From the IMG/VR virus record IMGVR_UViG_3300043436_004687, positions 186,001 to 250,000 of that record: DNA of 64,000 nucleotides, one strand, 5' to 3'. Below the pieces are notes generated by a model, which ran no database searches, was not told the DNA's origin, and saw only the letters and a program-made list of their open reading frames with translations. How positions within the stretch are numbered: the first letter of the stretch is position 1; every line of letters starts with the position of its first letter. Position numbers and translations under genes: made by a program. Shown here piece by piece: positions 18,159-39,089 of this stretch.

Positions 18159-18561
18159 AGAATCAATGAAAACAAATAGATGGCTATTGACTTTCCCTCC
18201 AGAATTAGGGTTTGGGAGAAGTTGGGTAACTAGAGTGGACACACCAAAATTAGTTATCAGTAAAAATCATAAAATAAAATGTAAAAAAATGAAAATTATT
18301 TTGTATGATTCGATACACCCTTATAAACCAAGAAACATTTTAGATTGGATCCTTTTAAATGATGGAATTAAAGAAACTACTACTGACATTAAATTACAAC
18401 TTTTAGATCCTACTGGGGTTGTTGTTGTAAAATGGGATTTATTAGATTGTAAGTTAAAATCAGTTGATTTTGGTAGTTTTAACATTGGTGATAATTCTCC
18501 TGTTGAAATATCATTAACCATAAAACCAAAAGAAATTAAAATAAATAAGATTCAATTGTAA
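18145..18561 (+). CDS. Tail-tube (T4 gp19-like) protein paralog
   Basis: K.NRW.L.FP.ELG, DIKLQLLDPTGVVV.KW.L, VDFGSFN....PVEISLTI. Confidence 0.65.
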   Translation: MDIIKESMKTNRWLLTFPPELGFGRSWVTRVDTPKLVISKNHKIKCKKMKIILYDSIHPYKPRNILDWILLNDGIKETTTDIKLQLLDPTGVVVVKWDLLDCKLKSVDFGSFNIGDNSPVEISLTIKPKEIKINKIQL

Positions 18562-18588
18562 AATATATTACAATATAAAAAATATGAT

Positions 18589-18810
18589 ATGAAAATAAAT
18601 TCTTATGAAGATATAACAAGTTTTGAAATAGCTTATGAATATTTAAATTTAAATCCTAGTGATTATAATTCTGTTGAGGGGAAATTAGAAATTATCAATC
18701 AAGCTATGATTAGAGCAGGTGGTTTAGAAGAAACATTTGAAACAAATTTAAATGATAAGAAATTAAATGTCTTATTAAATAAAGCTAAAAAATCATTTTT
18801 AATTAAATAA
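18589..18810 (+). CDS. Hypothetical protein
   Basis: 73-aa ORF (I.SYEDITSFE.A). Confidence 0.55.
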   Translation: MKINSYEDITSFEIAYEYLNLNPSDYNSVEGKLEIINQAMIRAGGLEETFETNLNDKKLNVLLNKAKKSFLIK

Positions 18811-18818
18811 ATTATAAG

Positions 18819-19259
18819 ATGAAAGGAAAATATTTAATAACAACTGATTCTTGGTTTTATGCACCTAATGGAAAACAATATAGATGAGTATGGGGTGAGG
18901 TTGAAATATTAGGTGATAATATTTTAGGTATTAAAACAAATGCTAGAAGTGTAAATTGGTTTGCTAAGGTAGGTAGTGAAAGTAATCATATTATTATTGC
19001 TGGTTGTCAAATTCATTATGCTGTTAAAAGTAATAATAAACCAAATATGAATGAGGTTGAAGATTATTCATTAGAAAATGGTGAATTTAAACCATACACT
19101 AGACCTTCTGTTATTTATATAGCAGAACCCACAAAAGATTATGAGACAATAGAACAACAAAATAAACTAATTTCTTTAATTCAAGAACAAGGTTTTAAAA
19201 AAGTTGGTGATATTGAAAATCGTGGTAAATTTATTTACTTAACTGGGATTAAAATTTAA
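18819..19259 (+). pseudogene. 146-codon ORF broken by one in-frame TGA
   Basis: ATG 18819 MKGKYLITTDSWFYAPNGKQYR, TGA at 18885-18887, then VWGEVEILG... open and in frame with the 19047-19259 ORF. Confidence 0.75.
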
Positions 19260-19263
19260 AAAT

Positions 19264-20226
19264 ATGTTAAAAGATTTAAAAGTAATTAAAAGAGAAGAAA
19301 TTAAAAATATTTTATTTGAAAAAGATAATGTAATTTATTGTGGAAAATCTAAAGATTTTATTACTAAAGAATATGTTATTATAAAAGGTGAAATTTTTTT
19401 ATATTTAGAAAGAATTTTTAAAAATAATCTTATCGGTAAAGAAATTATTTATTTTAGTTTCGCTTCTAAAACAAATTTTAATTTATATTCAACTATTGTA
19501 TATTTTAGAAATGGTGAATTTAATAAAATAAAACAACAATTTAAATTTGGTAATGAGATAATAATACTTAAAGACCGTGTTAAAGGTAATGTTGATCAAT
19601 TTGTCTATCGTTCCCAAATTAAAAAATCTTTGAAATGTAAAAAATGTGTGCAATATAATATGTTGAAATTTACTTTATGGGAAAAGATGGTGTATAGTTA
19701 TTTTAAAAATACATTATCCGAATTTACTTTTTCTTATTTTTATAAGAATTATGAAGAAGAACTTAAGAATTATGAAGAAAAAAATAAAAAATGTGATTGT
19801 GTTAATAAAAAATATGAAATTAATAACATTTTAAATAGATTTATTGAAAGGGGTTATAAAAATAATAAATTAATTTATAAATGTAGTAGGTTTTATGGAT
19901 ATCTGGATAATGGTTGGTGTAAAATTTTTGATAGGGGTAAAGTTATTGCGTTTTTATCAGACCATAAAATAAATTATTTTGATTTAAAAAGCGGTCTGTT
20001 TGTTAAAAGAAATAAAGAGGGTAAATTAATTTCAATAACTAAAAATGGTGAATGTCTTCTTAAAATTAAAAGATATGGTGGTAAAATAATAGAATATTGG
20101 GATTATATGGGAAATATTTATTATAAAAAAGTGTTTAAAAATCCATGTCAATTAGATGGTGAGGAAATATTTAAACTAAACTGCTTAGATTTAAACTTAA
20201 AATCTTTAATTGATAATGATATTTAA
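19264..20226 (+). CDS. Hypothetical protein (Lys/Tyr-rich)
   Basis: 320-aa ORF; C-terminus weakly resembles MORN-variant repeats. Confidence 0.6.
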   Translation: MLKDLKVIKREEIKNILFEKDNVIYCGKSKDFITKEYVIIKGEIFLYLERIFKNNLIGKEIIYFSFASKTNFNLYSTIVYFRNGEFNKIKQQFKFGNEIIILKDRVKGNVDQFVYRSQIKKSLKCKKCVQYNMLKFTLWEKMVYSYFKNTLSEFTFSYFYKNYEEELKNYEEKNKKCDCVNKKYEINNILNRFIERGYKNNKLIYKCSRFYGYLDNGWCKIFDRGKVIAFLSDHKINYFDLKSGLFVKRNKEGKLISITKNGECLLKIKRYGGKIIEYWDYMGNIYYKKVFKNPCQLDGEEIFKLNCLDLNLKSLIDNDI

Positions 20227-22494: not shown

Positions 22495-22525
22495 TTTGAT
22501 TTATAAAAAATATAAACTATATTTG
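22495..22525 (+). promoter_or_regulatory. Bacteroidota-type promoter for the coiled-coil gene plus RNA unit
   Basis: TTTG 22495-22498, 19-nt spacer, TATATTTG 22518-22525, 21 nt before ATG 22547. Confidence 0.78.
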
Positions 22526-22546
22526 CAACATAAAAATATAAAAAAT

Positions 22547-23065
22547 ATGGAAATTACAATTACAGAAGCATTAAGGTTAAAAAGTGATTTATCAAAAATA
22601 GTTAACACCTTAAAAAATAAAATTAGGTACTCTTCTTTTGGTGATAATTTTGAGGATGATCAGAAAACATCTAAAGATGAGGATAAATTTGTTGATGTTG
22701 AGACATTATTAATCACTTCATTGAGTTATTCAGAAGAGTTGAATAATTCTTTATCTGACTACAATAAAGATAAACAAGTTGATAAATTGGTGAGAAAAAT
22801 GCAAAACGCTAAACTTTTACTTGAAGTTTATGAATCTTCTTTATCAAAAACAAAGGCTACTTCTCAAACAACCTTTGTAAATCTTGGCACTTCAAGACAA
22901 TCAGTTGTACATAAATTTGTACCCACTGTAACATCAAAAGAAATAAAAACTAGAATATCACTTACTAAAGATTTGGTCAGACAATACCAATCTAAAGTTG
23001 AAGAGTTAAATCAAGGTAAATTAACCTTATCCTTCAATTATGATAATATTGAAGAATTAAATTAA
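22547..23065 (+). CDS. DIP1984-like alpha-helical coiled-coil protein (172 aa)
   Basis: Starts MEITITEALRLKSDLSKIVNTLKNKI (x-EAL-x-K/R-x-L pattern); helical throughout; ends ..QYQSKVEELN..L. Confidence 0.65.
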   Translation: MEITITEALRLKSDLSKIVNTLKNKIRYSSFGDNFEDDQKTSKDEDKFVDVETLLITSLSYSEELNNSLSDYNKDKQVDKLVRKMQNAKLLLEVYESSLSKTKATSQTTFVNLGTSRQSVVHKFVPTVTSKEIKTRISLTKDLVRQYQSKVEELNQGKLTLSFNYDNIEELN

Positions 23066-23072
23066 AAGTATT

Positions 23073-23336
23073 ATATCTTAAGTTAGTATAAAAACTGTCG
23101 GTGGTTTCATCGAATAGGGTTCAAATTCACTGAATTATTTGATATTTTATTATTTGTTAGAAAACAAATTTCAAGGCAACTATATACATAAATTATGTAA
23201 ATTTAAATTTAAGGGTAGTAGAGGATTGATGTTAAAAAGCCTTAATCACCAAACACACGTAAAACTATGTAAAATTGTAATCATGTAAAATTGTTTGAAG
23301 CGGAAAAGCTTATTTAATTTAGAAAACTTAGGGTAT
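23073..23336 (+). ncRNA. Candidate structured ncRNA with tandem GUAA repeats
   Basis: No long ORF. 5' atatcttaagtt (23073-84) pairs with 3' aacttagggtat (23325-36). Seven internal stems; followed at once by a terminator. Confidence 0.65.
23259..23294 (+). repeat. Short tandem GTAA repeats, including a 12-nt direct repeat atgtaaaattgt x2
   Basis: GTAA at 23259, 23269, 23277, 23285; atgtaaaattgt at 23267-78 and 23283-94. Confidence 0.85.
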
Positions 23337-23341
23337 TTTAT

Positions 23342-23375
23342 AAAACCACATAAAAATTAATTTTTATGTGGTTTT
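23342..23375. terminator. Palindromic intrinsic terminator
   Basis: Perfect 34-bp palindrome aaaaccacataaaaatt|aatttttatgtggtttt plus T tail. Confidence 0.85.
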
Positions 23376-23424
23376 TTGTTGATTATTAAGTATTAAATGC
23401 TTATATTATAAAAAATATAAATTA

Positions 23425-24921
23425 ATGATTACAATAATTTGTTCGTCACAACATAATCTTGATTCTTTTAAAGAACATATAATAAACTTATCGGGGTTAC
23501 AAAAAAATGAAATACAATTTTTAGGTTATCTTAATAATGGTGAATTTTCTTTATCTGAAATTTATAATAAGGGTATTATAGAATCAACGAATGATTATTT
23601 AGTTTGTGTTCATGATGACATCAGATTAGAAAAAAATTGGGGTGTTAAATTATTAAAAGATTTTAATGATAACCCAGGTTTTTCAATAATTGGTAAAGCT
23701 GGTTCTTGTTATTTCCCAGAAAGTGGTATATTTTGGGAGCGAATGCAATATACAATGGTCGGGCAGGTTTATCACCACCCTAAAGATGGGAAAAAATTCT
23801 TATCTAAATATTCCCCTAAATTACCTTTTTTAGTTCCAGTAGTTACCATTGATGGTTTATTTATAGCCTTCAATAAAAGAAAAATAAAATATAATTTTGA
23901 TGAAACATTGAAGGGGTTTCATTTTTATGATCATGGTTTTTGTCTACCCAATTATTTAAGTGGTGTTAAAATAGGTGTAACATCTTCATTTGAAATTACT
24001 CATAACTCATTGGGTAAACCTAATGAAACTTTTTTTGAAACTAAAGAAAAATTTGTTGATAAATATAAGGGCCTTTTACCTTTAGATTTAAAACCAAATA
24101 GTGTTTATTATAATGAGGTTAAAAATAAGGTTAGAAATTCTGGTAAGGTGGCGGTGATCATCCCAACTAAAGGTAACCTTGAATTATTATTTCAATGTGT
24201 TGATTCATTCTTTTTGAATTGTGATTCTAACACTTTTGATATTATTATAGCTGATACTGGTTCAACTAAAAAAGAATTATTAGAAATTAAGGAGCGATAT
24301 AGTAATAGGGTAAATCTAGTTGAATACAATTATTATAACTTTGCTAAAATTAATAATGATGTGGTCAAAAATTTAGATTGTCAATATGAATATTTATTAT
24401 TTTGTAATAATGATATAAAATTGTTAAATGATGTAGTGTCTGGTATGCTTAAAGTTTTTAAAGAAAATAAAAAAGCTGGTACCGTTGGTTGTAGATTACA
24501 TTTCAAAGACAATACCATCCAACATGATGGAGTATTTTCTGTTATACATAAAGAAAAAAGAAGTTTTAATGTATCACATATAAATTTAAATAATTATTAT
24601 AATTATAAATTAGGTTTAAATGAGGTGATTGGTTCTACAGCTGCTTTATTAATGATTAGGAAAAATACATTTATCAATGCTGGTATGTTTAATGAAAATT
24701 ATAATGAATGTTTCGAAGATGTGGAATTGAATATGAAATTAGTTACTATGGGTTATAAAAATTATTGTCATAGTGATTTAGTTGCATATCATTATGAGTC
24801 TCAAACTAGGAACCAAGATGTAAATAAAAACGATAAGTTAATGAGGGATTATAATGAAAATCTTTTACCATTCTTCAATCAAAATATCAATAAATTAAAA
24901 GAAAAAACAATATTTATATAA
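23425..24921 (+). CDS. Two-domain GT-A (GT2) glycosyltransferase
   Basis: N-domain YNKGI...VCVHDDI...IDGLF...FHFYD; C-domain VAVIIPT, IIIADTGS, LFCNNDI, FEDVELN. Confidence 0.92.
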   Translation: MITIICSSQHNLDSFKEHIINLSGLQKNEIQFLGYLNNGEFSLSEIYNKGIIESTNDYLVCVHDDIRLEKNWGVKLLKDFNDNPGFSIIGKAGSCYFPESGIFWERMQYTMVGQVYHHPKDGKKFLSKYSPKLPFLVPVVTIDGLFIAFNKRKIKYNFDETLKGFHFYDHGFCLPNYLSGVKIGVTSSFEITHNSLGKPNETFFETKEKFVDKYKGLLPLDLKPNSVYYNEVKNKVRNSGKVAVIIPTKGNLELLFQCVDSFFLNCDSNTFDIIIADTGSTKKELLEIKERYSNRVNLVEYNYYNFAKINNDVVKNLDCQYEYLLFCNNDIKLLNDVVSGMLKVFKENKKAGTVGCRLHFKDNTIQHDGVFSVIHKEKRSFNVSHINLNNYYNYKLGLNEVIGSTAALLMIRKNTFINAGMFNENYNECFEDVELNMKLVTMGYKNYCHSDLVAYHYESQTRNQDVNKNDKLMRDYNENLLPFFNQNINKLKEKTIFI

Positions 24922-25703
24922 TGGTTTTAGGTGTAAGTTACAATGTGTTTGATGGTATTGAATTATTAACTAAATCAATTAAAAGTATTCGAAGTTCAGT
25001 TGATTATATATCAGTTATATATCAAAATACTTCTAATTTTGGTAATGAGATAAGTGAGAATAATTTAGATTTATTTTTAAAATTAAAAAAAGATAAGTTA
25101 ATAGATGATTATTTAGAATATAAGCCTAATATTAAATTACAGCCTCATCAAAATGAAGTTAATAAACGGAATTATGGTTTAGCAATGTCTGAAGCTAATG
25201 GTTGTACTCATCATATGTCAATGGATACTGATGAATTTTATGATGAAGTTGAATTTAACAATGTGAAAAAAATAATAATTGAGGGTGATTATGATTCATC
25301 TGCTTGTCAAATGATGACTTATTATAAATCAGGTGATTTTGCATTGTCACCAAGTGAAGAGTATTTTGTCCCGTTTATAGTTAAGTTAGGTATTGATGTA
25401 AGATATGATATGAATAATCAATTTCCAGTTTTAGTAGATTCAACTAGAAAAGTTAACGGTAAAAAATGTTTATTGTTAGATAGACAAACCATTCAAATGC
25501 ATCACATGTCTTATGTTAGAAACAATCTATATTTAAAATTAAATAATTCTTCGGCTAGATGTAATTTTAAAGATATTGACTACATAGTTGATTATTTCGA
25601 TAAATGGTCATTCCCTAATAAAGCGTTAATGGGTGGTTTACCAAATTGGTTTAGTGATATTGTAAAAGTTGAAAATAAATTTAATATTAATGAGCGAAAT
25701 TAA
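24921..25703 (+). CDS. GT-A-fold glycosyltransferase-like protein
   Basis: VSYNVFDG, KRNYGL, MSMDTDEFY (DxD), MHHMSYVR. Confidence 0.75.
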   Translation: MVLGVSYNVFDGIELLTKSIKSIRSSVDYISVIYQNTSNFGNEISENNLDLFLKLKKDKLIDDYLEYKPNIKLQPHQNEVNKRNYGLAMSEANGCTHHMSMDTDEFYDEVEFNNVKKIIIEGDYDSSACQMMTYYKSGDFALSPSEEYFVPFIVKLGIDVRYDMNNQFPVLVDSTRKVNGKKCLLLDRQTIQMHHMSYVRNNLYLKLNNSSARCNFKDIDYIVDYFDKWSFPNKALMGGLPNWFSDIVKVENKFNINERN

Positions 25704-26334
25704 TGTAGATGTTATAATATTATCTGATATTAAAACGAGTGATTTGACTTTACAATCAATAAAAACTTTAAAAGAGTCTGAAACTAATATTAATTTTAAT
25801 ATAGTTGTCATAGAAAATTCAACACATTATTATTCTGGTGTAACAAATTTAAAATTAAATTTGGAATTCAATTATAATATGTTTATGAATCTTGGGGCTA
25901 AAGCAACTAATAGTGATTATATTGTATTTGCAAATAACGATTTAATCTTCAATAAGAAGTGGTTTTCTGAGTTATTAAAGTATGATTTTGATTGTATGTC
26001 ACCAAGATGTCCAGTTGATGTGAGACAACAGAATATAAATATGGATTTTATTAGTGGTTATCAAGTTGGAAATGTTTTTAGCGGTTGGTGTTTTGTTTTA
26101 AAAAGAAAAATATGGGAACAAATAAATGGTTTAGATGAAGATTTTAAATTCTGGTATGCTGATAATGCTACAATAGAACAATTAAAAACTATAAATGTCG
26201 TCCCTTATTTAATTACCAACTCAATAGTAGAACATTTAGGGAGCAGAACGTTAACAAAAGAAACTAAAGAATTACAACATCATCTTACGGGTGAACAAAG
26301 CAGAATTTTTTATGAAAAATATGGAAGAAAATAA
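25690..26334 (+). CDS. GT2 glycosyltransferase
   Basis: VDVIILS, FNYN..MN.GA, VFANNDL, GLDEDFKFWYAD, VEHLGS; likely start ATG 25690. Confidence 0.88.
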   Translation: MSEINVDVIILSDIKTSDLTLQSIKTLKESETNINFNIVVIENSTHYYSGVTNLKLNLEFNYNMFMNLGAKATNSDYIVFANNDLIFNKKWFSELLKYDFDCMSPRCPVDVRQQNINMDFISGYQVGNVFSGWCFVLKRKIWEQINGLDEDFKFWYADNATIEQLKTINVVPYLITNSIVEHLGSRTLTKETKELQHHLTGEQSRIFYEKYGRK

Positions 26335-26941
26335 CTTTATTCACCCAACTTCAATAGTTGAAGATAATGTAATATTAGGTAAAAATAATTATATAGGGCC
26401 ATTTTGTCTTATTAAAAGTGGTACTATAATTGGGGATAACAATAGATTTGAGGCTTATGTTTCTATTGGAACTAATCCAGAACACAAAGAATTTTTTACT
26501 GGAAGTGACTATTCGGTGACTATAAATAATAATAATACTTTTAGAGAATTTGTTACAGTTAATTCAGGATCTGTTAAAGACACTCTAATAGGTAATAATT
26601 GTATTTTATTAAGAAATTCACATGTTGGTCATGATTGTATTTTAGAAGATGGTGTTACTTTATCTTGTAACGTATTAGTTGGTGGACATTCTTTAATTAA
26701 ACAAGGGGTTAATATGGGTTTAGGTTCTATTTGTCACCAATATTCTATTTTAGGTGATTATTCTATGATAGGTATGGGTGGTATTGTTACCAAATCAAGT
26801 AATATTAAACCTGGTTTTATTTATGTTGGTAATCCTTGTAAAGTTTTAAAGGTAAATGAAATTGGTCTTAAACGAAATAACATTGATGTTAATAAATGGG
26901 AAATGTTATCTAAAAAATACGAAGAATTATGTTTGAAATAG
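26321..26941 (+). CDS. LpxA-like left-handed beta-helix acyl/acetyltransferase
   Basis: IHPTSIV, IGPFC.I, FREFVTVNSG, SHVGHDC.L; hexapeptide repeats; lacks the LpxA C-terminal helical domain. Confidence 0.85.
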   Translation: MEENNFIHPTSIVEDNVILGKNNYIGPFCLIKSGTIIGDNNRFEAYVSIGTNPEHKEFFTGSDYSVTINNNNTFREFVTVNSGSVKDTLIGNNCILLRNSHVGHDCILEDGVTLSCNVLVGGHSLIKQGVNMGLGSICHQYSILGDYSMIGMGGIVTKSSNIKPGFIYVGNPCKVLKVNEIGLKRNNIDVNKWEMLSKKYEELCLK

Positions 26942-27552
26942 GTATAGTAGTGCCTTGTTGGGGAAGGCCTCTCAGAACCAGACGAATTATAGAAGCTATT
27001 TTAAATCAAAATATAAATAATTGGGAAGCTTTTGTTATAGGGGACGGTTGCCCATTATTCCAAAAAATGATAGATTCTGGGGAAGCTAATATTTATATTG
27101 AGAAAGCTGAAATAAATGGAAATAAATTGCATTTATTTAACTTAGATAGAAATTATGGTGGTTTTGGTTATAAAATAGTGGACTATGCTATTGAAAATTC
27201 AAAATCCAAATATTTTATTTTTGCTGGTAATGATGACATTTTACTTGAAAATCATTTTGAGCATTATCTAAGTGAAGTTGATGATTTTGATATGATAGCT
27301 TACCCCACATTTGTAGGTCCTACTAAATCAATTAGATACCCTAAATTAGAATGTAGCAGTGTCGGGCATTCTGAAATAATAATTAAAACTGAATTAATTA
27401 AAGATTATAAACATTCTTCAAATTATGGGCATGATTGGAATTTTATTGAGTTCATATTAAATAAAACTAACAAAATTAAAATATCAAATAACACAAATTA
27501 TACTTATATAGTTACTCATATTCCAGGAATAACTATTGACATAATAGATTAA
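26929..27552 (+). CDS. GT2 glycosyltransferase
   Basis: IVVPCWGR, FVIGDGC, FAGNDDIL, YGHDW.FI. Confidence 0.85.
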   Translation: MFEIGIVVPCWGRPLRTRRIIEAILNQNINNWEAFVIGDGCPLFQKMIDSGEANIYIEKAEINGNKLHLFNLDRNYGGFGYKIVDYAIENSKSKYFIFAGNDDILLENHFEHYLSEVDDFDMIAYPTFVGPTKSIRYPKLECSSVGHSEIIIKTELIKDYKHSSNYGHDWNFIEFILNKTNKIKISNNTNYTYIVTHIPGITIDIID

Positions 27553-27565
27553 AAATAAATAAATT

Positions 27566-28435
27566 ATGATTTCAGATTGGCTTAAAAGAAAATTAGCAAT
27601 GGTTGCATTGGCAACAGCAAATGTAGAAAAAAATGCATTTAATAATCAAGGTAATATGCTTTCAGATGGTATAGGGCACCAAAGATTAAAAACAACTGAT
27701 TCTTTATCGGAAGCTTTAAAACGTGGTGAAGTTACTGCTGAAGTTGAAGCATTAAGATGGCGCATGTACAAGATAATTGATCATCTAGACGGTAGAAAAA
27801 CCAATATAATTGGAACTGAATTAGATGAAAATGGTGATGAGAGGTATATTACTGAAACTGTTGCTAAACGTAAACCTAATATGAGACAATATATGGTAGA
27901 TCCTTACGATAGTTATCCTTTGGAAATTATCGTGGTAAATGATAAAACTGTTATGGGGATTACTGAAGCTAATCAGAAATTAGAAGATCAAACCATTATG
28001 GTAAATAGAAGTAATTTAAATAAGGTGGATATTGAATATTCTACCACTAAAATGTGTGTTAGAGATATTGGTGGAGGTCAAAAATTATTAGAATTTTATA
28101 TTTCTCAATACCCAAACGAATTTGATAGAAAAACTAGGTTGATGATTTCTGAATTAGAAAGATGTTCCAATGGTTTTAAATCAAATATTTTAGATATTGA
28201 TGGGGTTGGTTTTCAAAGTGTGAATTCAACTATTGGTGTTTCTCCTAATTTATTATATGAATATGAAATTTTAGGTTTTGATAAAATTGTTAAATTTAAT
28301 GGGCATTATATTGTTAAATTTAAAGCTAATGTTATTGTTGATGGTGAAAACATATTTGAGAAATACAGAGTTGAAAGTCTTGATCAAAAATATAATGAAA
28401 ATTTAAGTAAAAAAAATACTGATTATTATTTATAA
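27566..28435 (+). CDS. Hypothetical protein
   Basis: 289-aa ORF. Confidence 0.7.
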   Translation: MISDWLKRKLAMVALATANVEKNAFNNQGNMLSDGIGHQRLKTTDSLSEALKRGEVTAEVEALRWRMYKIIDHLDGRKTNIIGTELDENGDERYITETVAKRKPNMRQYMVDPYDSYPLEIIVVNDKTVMGITEANQKLEDQTIMVNRSNLNKVDIEYSTTKMCVRDIGGGQKLLEFYISQYPNEFDRKTRLMISELERCSNGFKSNILDIDGVGFQSVNSTIGVSPNLLYEYEILGFDKIVKFNGHYIVKFKANVIVDGENIFEKYRVESLDQKYNENLSKKNTDYYL

Positions 28436-38905: not shown

Positions 38906-38976
38906 TGCGGTTTAGTGTAATTGGTAACATAACGGGCTCATAACCCGAAGTCGAGGTTCGAGTCCTCAATCCGCTA
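38906..38976 (+). tRNA. tRNA-Met(CAT), initiator-type
   Basis: Anticodon arm cggg-ctCATaa-cccg (three consecutive G-C pairs), T-loop gagg-TTCGAGT-cctc, D-loop TGG, unpaired 1:72; no encoded CCA. Confidence 0.88.
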
Positions 38977-39089
38977 CAAATCAAGGTTAATACCGAATTG
39001 GCATTGAGCATTAAAAAGCTTTAGAATTATCTTTAATGGTAATAAAAATGTTAGTTCAAAATAATAACAATTATTTAAATTAATTAAAA

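What the first reader, a model, noticed from the sequence alone, without database searches (positions are those of the whole stretch)
22495..23375. Self-contained protein plus structured repeat-bearing RNA module (DIP1984-like coiled-coil gene and ~265-nt ncRNA)
Seen in sequence: in an otherwise gap-free gene run there is a complete transcription unit. It consists of a TTTG-N19-TATATTTG promoter (22495-22525), a 172-aa helical gene (22547-23065), about 275 nt with no long ORF, and a terminator (23342-23375). The non-coding part is closed by a 12-bp long-range stem (atatcttaagtt 23073-84 with aacttagggtat 23325-36). That stem has two G-U pairs, as expected for selection on RNA rather than DNA pairing. 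Internal hairpins lie at 23095-117, 23121-142, 23152-169, 23185-199, 23224-247 and 23298-311. A caaaca/tgtttg stem (23250-55/23292-97) encloses a 36-nt loop with four GUAA units spaced 10, 8 and 8 nt and separated by short variable linkers. Established knowledge: the N-terminal xEALxxK/RxxL helix pattern resembles the functionally uncharacterised DIP1984 family (recognised by eye only). Inference: protein and RNA form a ribonucleoprotein in which protomers bind the periodic GUAA units. It could be a guide/scaffold RNP, an RNA antitoxin pair or an anti-defence decoy, expressed early from a host-type promoter. I recognise no RT, Cas or nuclease partner nearby.
Basis: partly seen in the sequence, partly recalled or inferred. 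Interest (0 to 1): 0.9.

Follow-up and report, generated by a model that had tools for sequence, protein, structure and literature searches.

The report
New phage RNA with partner protein
A ~265-base folded non-coding RNA that matches no catalogued RNA family follows a small protein gene of unknown function in this giant phage and in every related phage checked, so the two probably work together, though what they do is unknown.

Summary
Window 23072-23336 (+) is one member of a conserved structured RNA family. Across 26 sequences, 95% of base-pair cells are paired against 72% in shuffles. 24 of 25 modelled pairs show compensatory changes. A pseudoknot and a further hairpin (P8) also covary. 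No Rfam 15 family, tRNA or tmRNA model matches it.

The RNA lies downstream of the 172-aa gene's homologue in all 28 loci with readable downstream sequence. This holds down to 23% protein identity, from 26% to 55% G+C, and in unrelated gene neighbourhoods.

The protein is a remote relative of the uncharacterised DIP1984/DUF6847 fold (PDB 3KDQ). It scores far below the family's curated cut-off.

- The window copy alone folds no better than shuffled sequence (z -0.7 to -1.3).
- The caaaca/tgtttg stem is not conserved.
- Only two tandem GUAA units are family-wide. The window's four come from a local 16-nt duplication.

Protein-RNA binding and the function remain untested. My best guess is a trans-acting RNA-protein complex, possibly connected to tRNA or translation.

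The parts
22495..22525 (+). Bacteroidota-type promoter-like motif (TTTG, 19 nt, TATATTTG), 22 nt before the start codon
   Evidence: It is the only match to this pattern in the window (not significant by chance alone). A TTG-N19-TAnnTTTG motif recurs at the same place in about half of the homologous loci.
22547..23065 (+). Gene for a 172-aa alpha/beta protein, a remote relative of the DIP1984/DUF6847 family
   Evidence: ORF. There are 39 close and 95 representative homologues. NF038048 gives 17.7 bits, E = 0.003, against a cut-off of 70. A family profile matches 3kdq_A at E = 0.002. AF2 pLDDT is 96.5. The top Foldseek PDB hit is 3kdq.
23072..23336 (+). Structured non-coding RNA, a new family, single copy in the window
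   Evidence: Covariance-model match of 103 bits, E = 1e-21, + strand only. Covariation statistics. No Rfam, tRNA or tmRNA match.
23073..23084 (+). P1, 5' strand of the closing helix (pairs with 23325-23336)
   Evidence: Nine modelled pairs, all with compensatory changes; six are 100% paired in 23 sequences.
23325..23336 (+). P1, 3' strand, preceded by the conserved GAAAAC (23322-23327)
23089..23091 (+). P2 5' strand (UAA), which pairs with 23319-23321 (UUA). The main clade has UGG/CCA. The conserved AGUA junction at 23085-88 lies between P1 and P2.
   Evidence: Three pairs, each with 4-5 pair types.
23092..23113 (+). H-type pseudoknot. AAA(C) at 23092-95 pairs with (G)UUU at 23104-07 inside the loop of hairpin P3 (23098-101 / 23110-113).
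   Evidence: P3 has 4-5 pairs, all covarying. The pseudoknot columns 25-27 x 38-40 are 88-96% paired with up to 6 pair types. Other members show AAAGG/CCUUU, AGGU/ACCU and AGGG/CCCU.
23122..23141 (+). Hairpin P4 with a loop containing CUGAAU (family consensus CCGAAU), flanked by the conserved AUAGGG/UUC and GAUAUUUU
23152..23169 (+). Hairpin P5 (7 bp, loop AGAA)
   Evidence: Read from the sequence. An A/U-rich hairpin with an AGAA/CGAA loop sits at the same place in relatives.
23186..23198 (+). Hairpin P6, variable in sequence and length between relatives but always a hairpin
23221..23243 (+). Hairpin P8: GAGG/CCUU closing the most conserved block of the family, AUUGAUGU(U)AAAAAG, as a 15-nt loop (23225-23239)
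   Evidence: The stem changes completely between clades while the loop is kept: GCAA/UUGC, ACAA/UUGU, AUAA/UUAU, AGAA/UUCU, GCAC/GUGC, GAGG/CCUU (and the alignment).
23259..23294 (+). A-rich single-stranded tract with four GUAA units, including a 12-nt block repeated at a 16-nt offset (23267-78 and 23283-94)
   Evidence: The family-wide core is GUAAAA-NN-GUAA.
23298..23311 (+). Hairpin AAGC/GCUU, specific to the window's sub-clade. It takes the place of a tRNA-like T-arm (GGGUUCGAUUCCC) present in most relatives.
   Evidence: The T-arm helix covaries in relatives (helix 6).
23342..23375 (+). Intrinsic terminator
   Evidence: Equivalent terminators follow the RNA in relatives.

Best explanation
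This is a conserved two-gene module of uncultivated, mostly very large phages. The first gene encodes a ~172-aa alpha/beta protein remotely related to the uncharacterised DIP1984/DUF6847 fold. The second gene, just downstream on the same strand, encodes a ~210-290-nt non-coding RNA of a family not present in Rfam 15.

Shown: the RNA folds into a multi-helix structure.
- It is closed by P1 and P2.
- It contains an H-type pseudoknot (P3) and hairpins P4 to P8.
- Most members also carry a tRNA-like T-arm.
- It ends at its own intrinsic terminator.

Inferred: the RNA is made as the 3' part of the gene's transcript, or from a promoter buried in the gene's end. It accumulates as a stable RNA and acts in trans together with the co-encoded protein as a ribonucleoprotein. 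The conserved unpaired blocks would be the contact surfaces for the protein and/or a host target. These blocks are the CCGAAU loop, the AUUGAUGUAAAAAG loop and the A-rich GUAA tract.

The T-arm, and the position of distant members inside phage tRNA clusters, point weakly towards the tRNA/translation machinery as that target.
For: Structure:
- 95.2% of 578 pair cells are paired against 71.7% in shuffles. Sliding the 3' partners gives 32-51%.
- 24 of 25 pairs carry compensatory changes.
- The pseudoknot and P8 covary.
- All 24 members fold below their shuffle mean; mean z = -1.8.
- G-U pairs and + strand-only model hits fix the strand.
- There is no conserved ORF.

Linkage:
- The RNA was found downstream of the gene in 26 loci by the model, plus L108 and L109.
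- These loci span protein identity from 100% down to 23% and G+C from 26% to 55%.
- L102 has the pair flanked by opposite-strand genes.
- L106, L107, L108 and L109 have unrelated neighbours.
- There is only one copy in the 64-kb window, and none in about 1.2 Mb of unrelated viral loci.

Novelty:
- Nothing in Rfam for the window or for 10 relatives.
- ARAGORN finds nothing.

tRNA link:
- The T-arm helix covaries.
- L018, L106 and L107 lie in tRNA arrays.
Against: - Physical binding of the protein to the RNA is not shown by anything here.
- The protein is not basic: pI is 6.6 for the window copy and 5.4-9.0 across the family.
- Linkage was tested only from the protein side. RNA copies without the protein could not be looked for in the large collections.
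- In close relatives an extra 170-aa ORF (L023) or 233 nt (L021/L022) lies between gene and RNA, so tight coupling is not required.
- The T-arm is missing in the window's own sub-clade and in L017, L102 and L107. It therefore cannot be essential, and the tRNA-related guess is weak.
- No expression data exist.
Confidence: 0.55

Rival explanations
1. The RNA is an autonomous structured RNA that works without the neighbouring protein, as is assumed for other large phage-associated RNAs such as ROOL or GOLLD. On this view the adjacency reflects co-inheritance or shared regulation only.
For: Insertions between gene and RNA are tolerated. The protein is not basic. The RNA has extensive conserved tertiary-looking elements of its own.
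Against: The pair stays together down to 23% protein identity, across host types and in rearranged neighbourhoods, while all other neighbours change. Such persistence is hard to explain without a functional link.
Confidence: 0.22
2. The RNA is a cis-acting 3' untranslated element of the DIP1984-like mRNA. It would act as a stabiliser or an autoregulatory site bound by its own product, rather than as a trans-acting RNA.
For: P1 starts 2-25 nt after the stop codon in most loci. The RNA is followed by the unit's only terminator.
Against: Loop and junction sequences are conserved from 26% to 55% G+C, and the fold is complex. This far exceeds what a stabilising 3' structure needs. In L023 a whole ORF separates the two.
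Confidence: 0.12
3. It is a divergent tmRNA, Y-RNA-like or other tRNA-mimic RNA. It would act through tRNA-handling enzymes or the ribosome, with the protein as a substitute for SmpB or Ro.
For: Most members carry a canonical T-arm, a pseudoknot and a closing 5'/3' helix. Distant members lie in tRNA clusters.
Against: - About 33 nt separate the T-arm from the 3' strand of P1.
- There is no acceptor/CCA arrangement and no tag reading frame.
- ARAGORN finds nothing.
- The Rfam tmRNA model matches only the 15-nt T hairpin at 12 bits, and no Y-RNA match appears.
- The T-arm is absent from the window copy itself.
Confidence: 0.07
4. It is a toxin-antitoxin-like pair in which the RNA neutralises the protein, as in type III systems.
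For: A protein gene is tightly linked to a structured RNA, and there are short repeated units in the RNA.
Against: There is no tandem array of ~36-nt repeats. The RNA follows rather than precedes the gene. There is no PADLOC hit and no endoribonuclease fold. The RNA is a single complex fold.
Confidence: 0.03
5. It is a leader or riboswitch that controls the downstream glycosyltransferase genes through the terminator.
For: A structured RNA ends in a terminator upstream of a gene cluster.
Against: A promoter-like motif lies between the terminator and the next gene. The downstream gene is convergent in L102 and unrelated in L106-L109.
Confidence: 0.01

Closest known systems
DIP1984 family / DUF6847 (NCBIfam NF038048, Pfam PF20935; crystal structure PDB 3KDQ from Corynebacterium diphtheriae)
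   Same: Similar length and an end-to-end weak profile match. 3KDQ is the best PDB match by fold. The function is likewise unknown.
   Different: The window protein scores 17.7 bits against a cut-off of 70. Identity to 3KDQ is about 16% and TM-score 0.44-0.48. Whether bacterial DIP1984 genes have an associated RNA was not examined.
tmRNA with SmpB
   Same: An RNA with a pseudoknot and, in most members, a T-arm, plus a dedicated small protein. tmRNAs are known from large phages.
   Different: No tRNA-like acceptor/T-arm junction, no tag reading frame, and no model match. The partner is not an SmpB fold.
Bacterial and phage Y RNA-like RNAs (YrlA) with Ro/Rsr
   Same: A 5'/3' closing helix enclosing a module with a tRNA-like T-arm, acting as an RNA-protein complex.
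   Different: No Rfam match, and no Ro/TROVE gene among the neighbours examined. The partner protein is unrelated and far smaller.
Large phage-associated RNAs of unknown function (ROOL, GOLLD) and OLE RNA with its Oap proteins
   Same: Ornate, strongly covarying RNAs of unknown function. ROOL and GOLLD often sit near phage tRNA genes, and OLE has dedicated protein partners.
   Different: This RNA is two to three times shorter, has no sequence or model similarity, and shows a strict one-to-one link with one protein family.
phi29 packaging RNA (pRNA)
   Same: A phage-encoded structured RNA that functions bound to a phage protein oligomer.
   Different: No similarity and no link to packaging genes here. 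The comparison is by analogy only.
Proteins that read periodic short RNA units (TRAP with GAG/UAG repeats, HutP with UAG repeats)
   Different: The unit number and identity are not conserved in this family, and there is no fold similarity to TRAP or HutP.

Membership tests
DIP1984 family (NF038048) / DUF6847 (PF20935) | Score at or above the curated cut-off of the family model | tested here: not met
   17.7 bits against a cut-off of 70, E = 0.0031. There is no Pfam hit for the window protein, and only 3 of 51 relatives touch PF20935 at E < 0.01.
DIP1984 family (NF038048) / DUF6847 (PF20935) | Same fold as, and end-to-end alignment with, the solved member 3KDQ | tested here: inconclusive
   The family profile matches 3kdq_A at E = 0.0022, positions 14-158 against 9-150. 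3kdq is the top Foldseek PDB hit, E = 3.7e-3, TM 0.44-0.48, rmsd 8.5. 18 of 51 relatives hit NF038048, the best at 1.2e-5. This fits a remote superfamily relative, not a member.
tmRNA (RF00023) | tRNA-like domain with the acceptor stem joined directly to the T-arm, and a tag reading frame | tested here: not met
   ARAGORN finds no tmRNA in the window or in 22 loci. The Rfam tmRNA model matches only the 15-nt T hairpin of L005 at 12.1 bits against a cut-off of 47. About 33 nt separate the T-arm from the 3' strand of P1.
Y RNA-like (YrlA) / Ro ribonucleoprotein | Match to the family model, and an adjacent Ro/Rsr (TROVE) gene | tested here: not met
   No such Rfam hit at E <= 1 in 10 loci or at E <= 10 in the window region. 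The Pfam-scanned neighbours are a dUTPase, an IMPDH-like protein, an HD-domain protein and glycosyltransferases. The rest of the window was not scanned for TROVE.
Type III toxin-antitoxin (ToxIN-like) | Tandem array of ~34-36-nt RNA repeats upstream of an endoribonuclease toxin gene | tested here: not met
   No such tandem repeat. The RNA is downstream of the gene. No PADLOC hit. Fold matches are DIP1984 and prefoldin-like, not ToxN/AbiQ.
Retron | Reverse transcriptase gene next to an RNA closed by inverted repeats | tested here: not met
   A closing helix exists, but none of the seven Pfam-scanned neighbouring proteins is a reverse transcriptase, and there is no PADLOC hit. The remainder of the 340-kb genome was not examined.
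Any Rfam 15 family | Score at or above a family's gathering threshold | tested here: not met
   The only window hit is the tRNA-Met at 38906-38976. Nothing is credible in 22900-23500 at E <= 10 or in 10 homologous loci at E <= 1.
Intrinsic (Rho-independent) terminator | G+C-containing hairpin followed by a T run at the end of the unit | tested here: met
   23342-23375, 15 pairs, followed by TTTTTTG. Relatives carry equivalent hairpin-plus-T-run elements after the RNA.

The most novel reading that the evidence does not exclude
The module is a previously unrecognised class of phage-encoded ribonucleoprotein. It would comprise a dedicated DIP1984-like protein bound to a ~265-nt pseudoknotted RNA, spread across phages of several host phyla. 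It would act on a conserved host RNA-handling machine, such as the ribosome, tRNA enzymes or an RNA-targeting defence, through its invariant loops. This would also give the first functional handle on the DIP1984/DUF6847 protein family.
Probability: 0.35. Interest if true: 0.9.

Novelty: categorically new. Interest (0 to 1): 0.8.

Why it matters
Structured RNAs of this size with strong covariation and a dedicated protein partner are rare finds. Previous ones, such as tmRNA, Y RNA, OLE and the guide RNAs of mobile elements, each opened a field.

This RNA is conserved in sequence and fold from 26% to 55% G+C phage genomes. It has no entry in Rfam. It is tied to a protein family that has a crystal structure but no known function. 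It is also small enough for direct biochemistry and cryo-EM.

Even if the function turns out to be modest, the RNA is a new family that phage annotation pipelines currently leave as an empty gap.

Tried and rejected
- **tRNA/tmRNA detection.** ARAGORN found nothing.
- **Rfam.** Nothing at the gathering thresholds or at lax E-values, on the window and on 10 relatives.
- **Single-sequence folding energy as evidence.** It is not significant for the window copy.
- **tRNA-elbow idea.** I considered the conserved AGUAUGG as a D-loop mimic touching the T-loop. I rejected this because its UGG pairs with CCA near the 3' end and covaries (P2).
- **Tetraloop receptor.** UAUGG...CCUAA resembles an 11-nt receptor. 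I rejected it for the same reason.
- **RNase P, hammerhead and start-stop (AUG-UAA) resemblances.** These were recalled from memory. No model hit supports them, and the AUG is not conserved (GUG, ACG and AAG occur).
- **AGGGG pairing with the T-arm 3' strand.** This appears in one minimum-free-energy fold. There is no covariation with T-arm changes.
- **Alternative pairing of UAGGUUUC with GAAAAC plus the P1 3' strand.** It is possible in many members but broken in L104 and L106, so I did not adopt it.
- **Four DNA-pattern scans of IMG/VR for further RNA copies**. All 138 loci were rejected by the covariance model. Those I inspected were coding sequence.
- **Cultured phages.** No DNA or protein match among 50,697 phage records. 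There was also no match in GTDB species genomes.
- **Literature.** Nothing on the function of DIP1984 or DUF6847. The 2023 catalogue of viral candidate RNAs covers motifs of 29-151 nt seen at least three times in IMG/VR (PMC10690425). It would therefore not contain this RNA.
- **Structure-aware MAFFT (Q-INS-i).** It was not installed. The P5-P7 region is therefore only partly resolved.
Full report
**Source and setting.** The window is part of IMGVR_UViG_3300043436_004687, a 339,635-bp uncultivated phage contig. It is AT-rich. Around the finding the genes are packed on the + strand:
- an HD-domain protein,
- a dUTPase,
- an IMP dehydrogenase/GMP reductase-like protein,
- the 172-aa gene,
- a 360-nt gap,
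- then glycosyltransferases.

Taken alone, the window copy is not convincing. Its folding energy is within the range of dinucleotide shuffles: z = -0.72 for 23066-23340 and -1.26 for 23072-23336. The promoter pattern is expected about once per window by chance.

**Comparative evidence reverses that impression.**
- The protein has 39 close homologues and 95 cluster representatives at E <= 1e-3. All come from metagenomes, and several lie on 364-372-kb contigs.
- I fetched 17 loci from metagenome contigs and further loci by exact protein look-up.
- Nearly all show an ORF-free gap of about 300-420 nt after the gene.
- The gaps align, with conserved blocks and visibly compensating stems.
- RNAalifold predicted 25 pairs, 24 of them with double changes.

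**Covariance model.** A model built from 22 sequences found the RNA:
- once in the window, at 23072-23336, + strand, 103 bits;
- in 25 other loci;
- in L108, whose protein is 28% identical and whose DNA is 51% G+C.

L109 has a 23%-identical protein and 55% G+C. It shows the same P1, AGUA junction, P2 and GAACAC junction by eye.

The only loci without a detected RNA are L016, whose contig ends inside the gene, and L018, where a tRNA-Ser fills the 187 nt before the contig end.

**Pair counts on the model alignment.**
- 95.2% of cells are paired, against 71.7% for shuffled partners (0 of 500 shuffles reach the observed value).
- Sliding the partners by 1-3 columns gives 32-51%.
- 24 of 25 pairs show compensatory change.

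My own column scan added a three-pair pseudoknot between the P2-P3 junction and the P3 loop. It is 88-96% paired with up to six pair types.

Inspection anchored on the most conserved block showed a 4-7 bp helix, P8. Its sequence is completely different between clades, while its 13-15-nt loop, AUUGAUGUAAAAAG, is kept (alignment).

All 24 family members fold below their shuffle mean; mean z = -1.8. No ORF is conserved in the region. Model hits are on the + strand only, and the minus strand of the window copy folds worse than its shuffles.

**Architecture in window coordinates.**

| Element | Coordinates | Notes |
|---|---|---|
| P1 | 23073-84 / 23325-36 | closing helix |
| Junction | 23085-88 | AGUA |
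| P2 | 23089-91 / 23319-21 | |
| Pseudoknot | 23092-95 with 23104-07 | 3' strand lies inside the P3 loop |
| P3 | 23098-101 / 23110-113 | |
| P4 | 23122-26 / 23137-41 | loop related to CCGAAU |
| P5 | 23152-58 / 23163-69 | |
| P6 | 23186-98 | variable between relatives |
| P8 | 23221-24 / 23240-43 | |
| A-rich GUAA tract | 23259-94 | |
| Sub-clade hairpin | 23298-311 | |
| Junction | 23322-27 | GAAAAC |
| Terminator | 23342-75 | |

Most relatives carry a canonical tRNA-like T-arm (GGGUUCGAUUCCC) where the window's sub-clade has the 23298-311 hairpin. The T-arm helix itself covaries.

- The caaaca/tgtttg stem has no partner in the nearest relative.
- The four GUAA units contain a 12-nt block repeated at a 16-nt offset.
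- Across the family only GUAAAA-NN-GUAA is constant. L102 has one GUAA, L106 has two, and L108 has none but has GCAA units.

**Are gene and RNA one unit?**

In favour:
- The pair persists while everything around it changes. In L102 it sits between opposite-strand genes, with its own promoter-like motif and terminator.
- In L106, L107 and L018 it lies among tRNA genes.
- In L108 and L109 it lies among unrelated genes in GC-rich phages that use Shine-Dalgarno sites. Those hosts are therefore not the same phylum as the window's, which shows a Bacteroidota-type promoter motif.

Against strict coupling:
- L021 and L022 have 233 nt between the gene and the RNA, and L023 has a 170-aa ORF there.
- About half of the loci have no promoter motif before the gene.

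The reverse test, whether the RNA occurs without the protein, could only be done crudely. Four pattern scans of IMG/VR yielded 138 loci, none of which holds the RNA. This agrees with the protein scan, which found the protein on only one IMG/VR contig, the window's own.

**The protein.**
- AlphaFold2 with 51 relatives gives a confident model (pLDDT 96.5). It has four long helices and small beta elements.
- The best PDB match by fold is 3KDQ, the DIP1984 structure, followed by prefoldin beta subunits.
- In the viral structure library it matches uncharacterised proteins of large phages and giant viruses.
- Sequence support for DIP1984 is weak but consistent. I treat it as a remote relative, not a member.
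- There is no hit in PADLOC, and no meaningful hit in PHROGs for the family.
- The protein is about neutral. That argues mildly against a classical basic RNA binder.
- No paper in the library says what DIP1984 or DUF6847 does.

**Interpretation.**

Shown:
- a new, strongly covarying RNA family;
- its constant position after one protein family.

Inferred:
- the two form a ribonucleoprotein that acts in trans;
- the invariant unpaired blocks are binding surfaces.

Weakly inferred:
- a link to tRNA or translation, from the T-arm and the tRNA-cluster context.

I put about 0.95 on the RNA being a real functional structured RNA. I put about 0.75 on a functional link with the protein, about 0.5 on direct binding, and about 0.2 on any specific target class. 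Rival readings are listed with the tests that would separate them: an autonomous RNA, a cis-acting 3' element, a tmRNA/Y-RNA-type mimic, a toxin-antitoxin pair and a leader for the downstream genes.

**Novelty.** No Rfam 15 family matches, and the tRNA and tmRNA models do not fit. No cultured phage or reference bacterial genome carries the protein. The published large-scale catalogue of viral candidate RNAs would not have captured an RNA of this length and rarity (PMC10690425). Each known system I considered fails at least one defining feature that I tested. I therefore rate it as lying outside the known kinds, with the caveat that its function is unknown.

Noticed in passing
window 38906-38977 (+): A tRNA-Met (anticodon CAT) gene. 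It is the only Rfam or ARAGORN hit in the 64 kb and sits in a 480-nt gap between ORFs.
   Followed up: no
L023:571-1083: In an 85%-identical relative, a 170-aa ORF with no Pfam hit on record is inserted between the DIP1984-like gene and the RNA. L021 and L022 have a different 233-nt insert at the same spot. This junction appears to be an insertion hot spot.
   Followed up: partly
window 23379-23407 and 22496-22523: The same TTGATT...TATATT promoter-like arrangement occurs before the 172-aa gene and again just after the RNA's terminator, before the glycosyltransferase gene. Main-clade relatives have a conserved TTTACT...TATATTT element at the second position.
   Followed up: partly
window 23157-23165 and 23319-23327: The 9-nt string TTAGAAAAC occurs twice in the RNA. 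One copy is in the P5 loop and the other spans P2' and the GAAAAC junction. Its meaning is unknown.
   Followed up: no
L106:4528-5443, L107:542-2478, L018:33-1884: Distant members of the module sit inside phage tRNA gene arrays (5, 5 and 3 tRNAs in the fetched stretches). L106 also encodes a class II aminoacyl-tRNA synthetase-like protein just downstream.
   Followed up: partly
L107:1195-1250, L017:1115-1160, L108:3630-3670: In the most distant members both P3 and P4 carry a (G)CCGAAU-type loop (CUAAAU in P4 of L108), as if the two hairpins arose by duplication. In the main clade the P3 loop has instead become the pseudoknot partner.
   Followed up: no
window 23425-28435 (+): A run of glycosyltransferase-like genes follows the module: family 2 and Glyco_tranf_2_5 domains in the first, and unassigned ORFs after it. 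The same cluster follows the module in the main-clade relatives.
   Followed up: no
window 18561-19264: A 700-nt stretch with only two short + strand ORFs (73 and 70 aa) in an otherwise tightly packed gene run. I did not examine it further.
   Followed up: no
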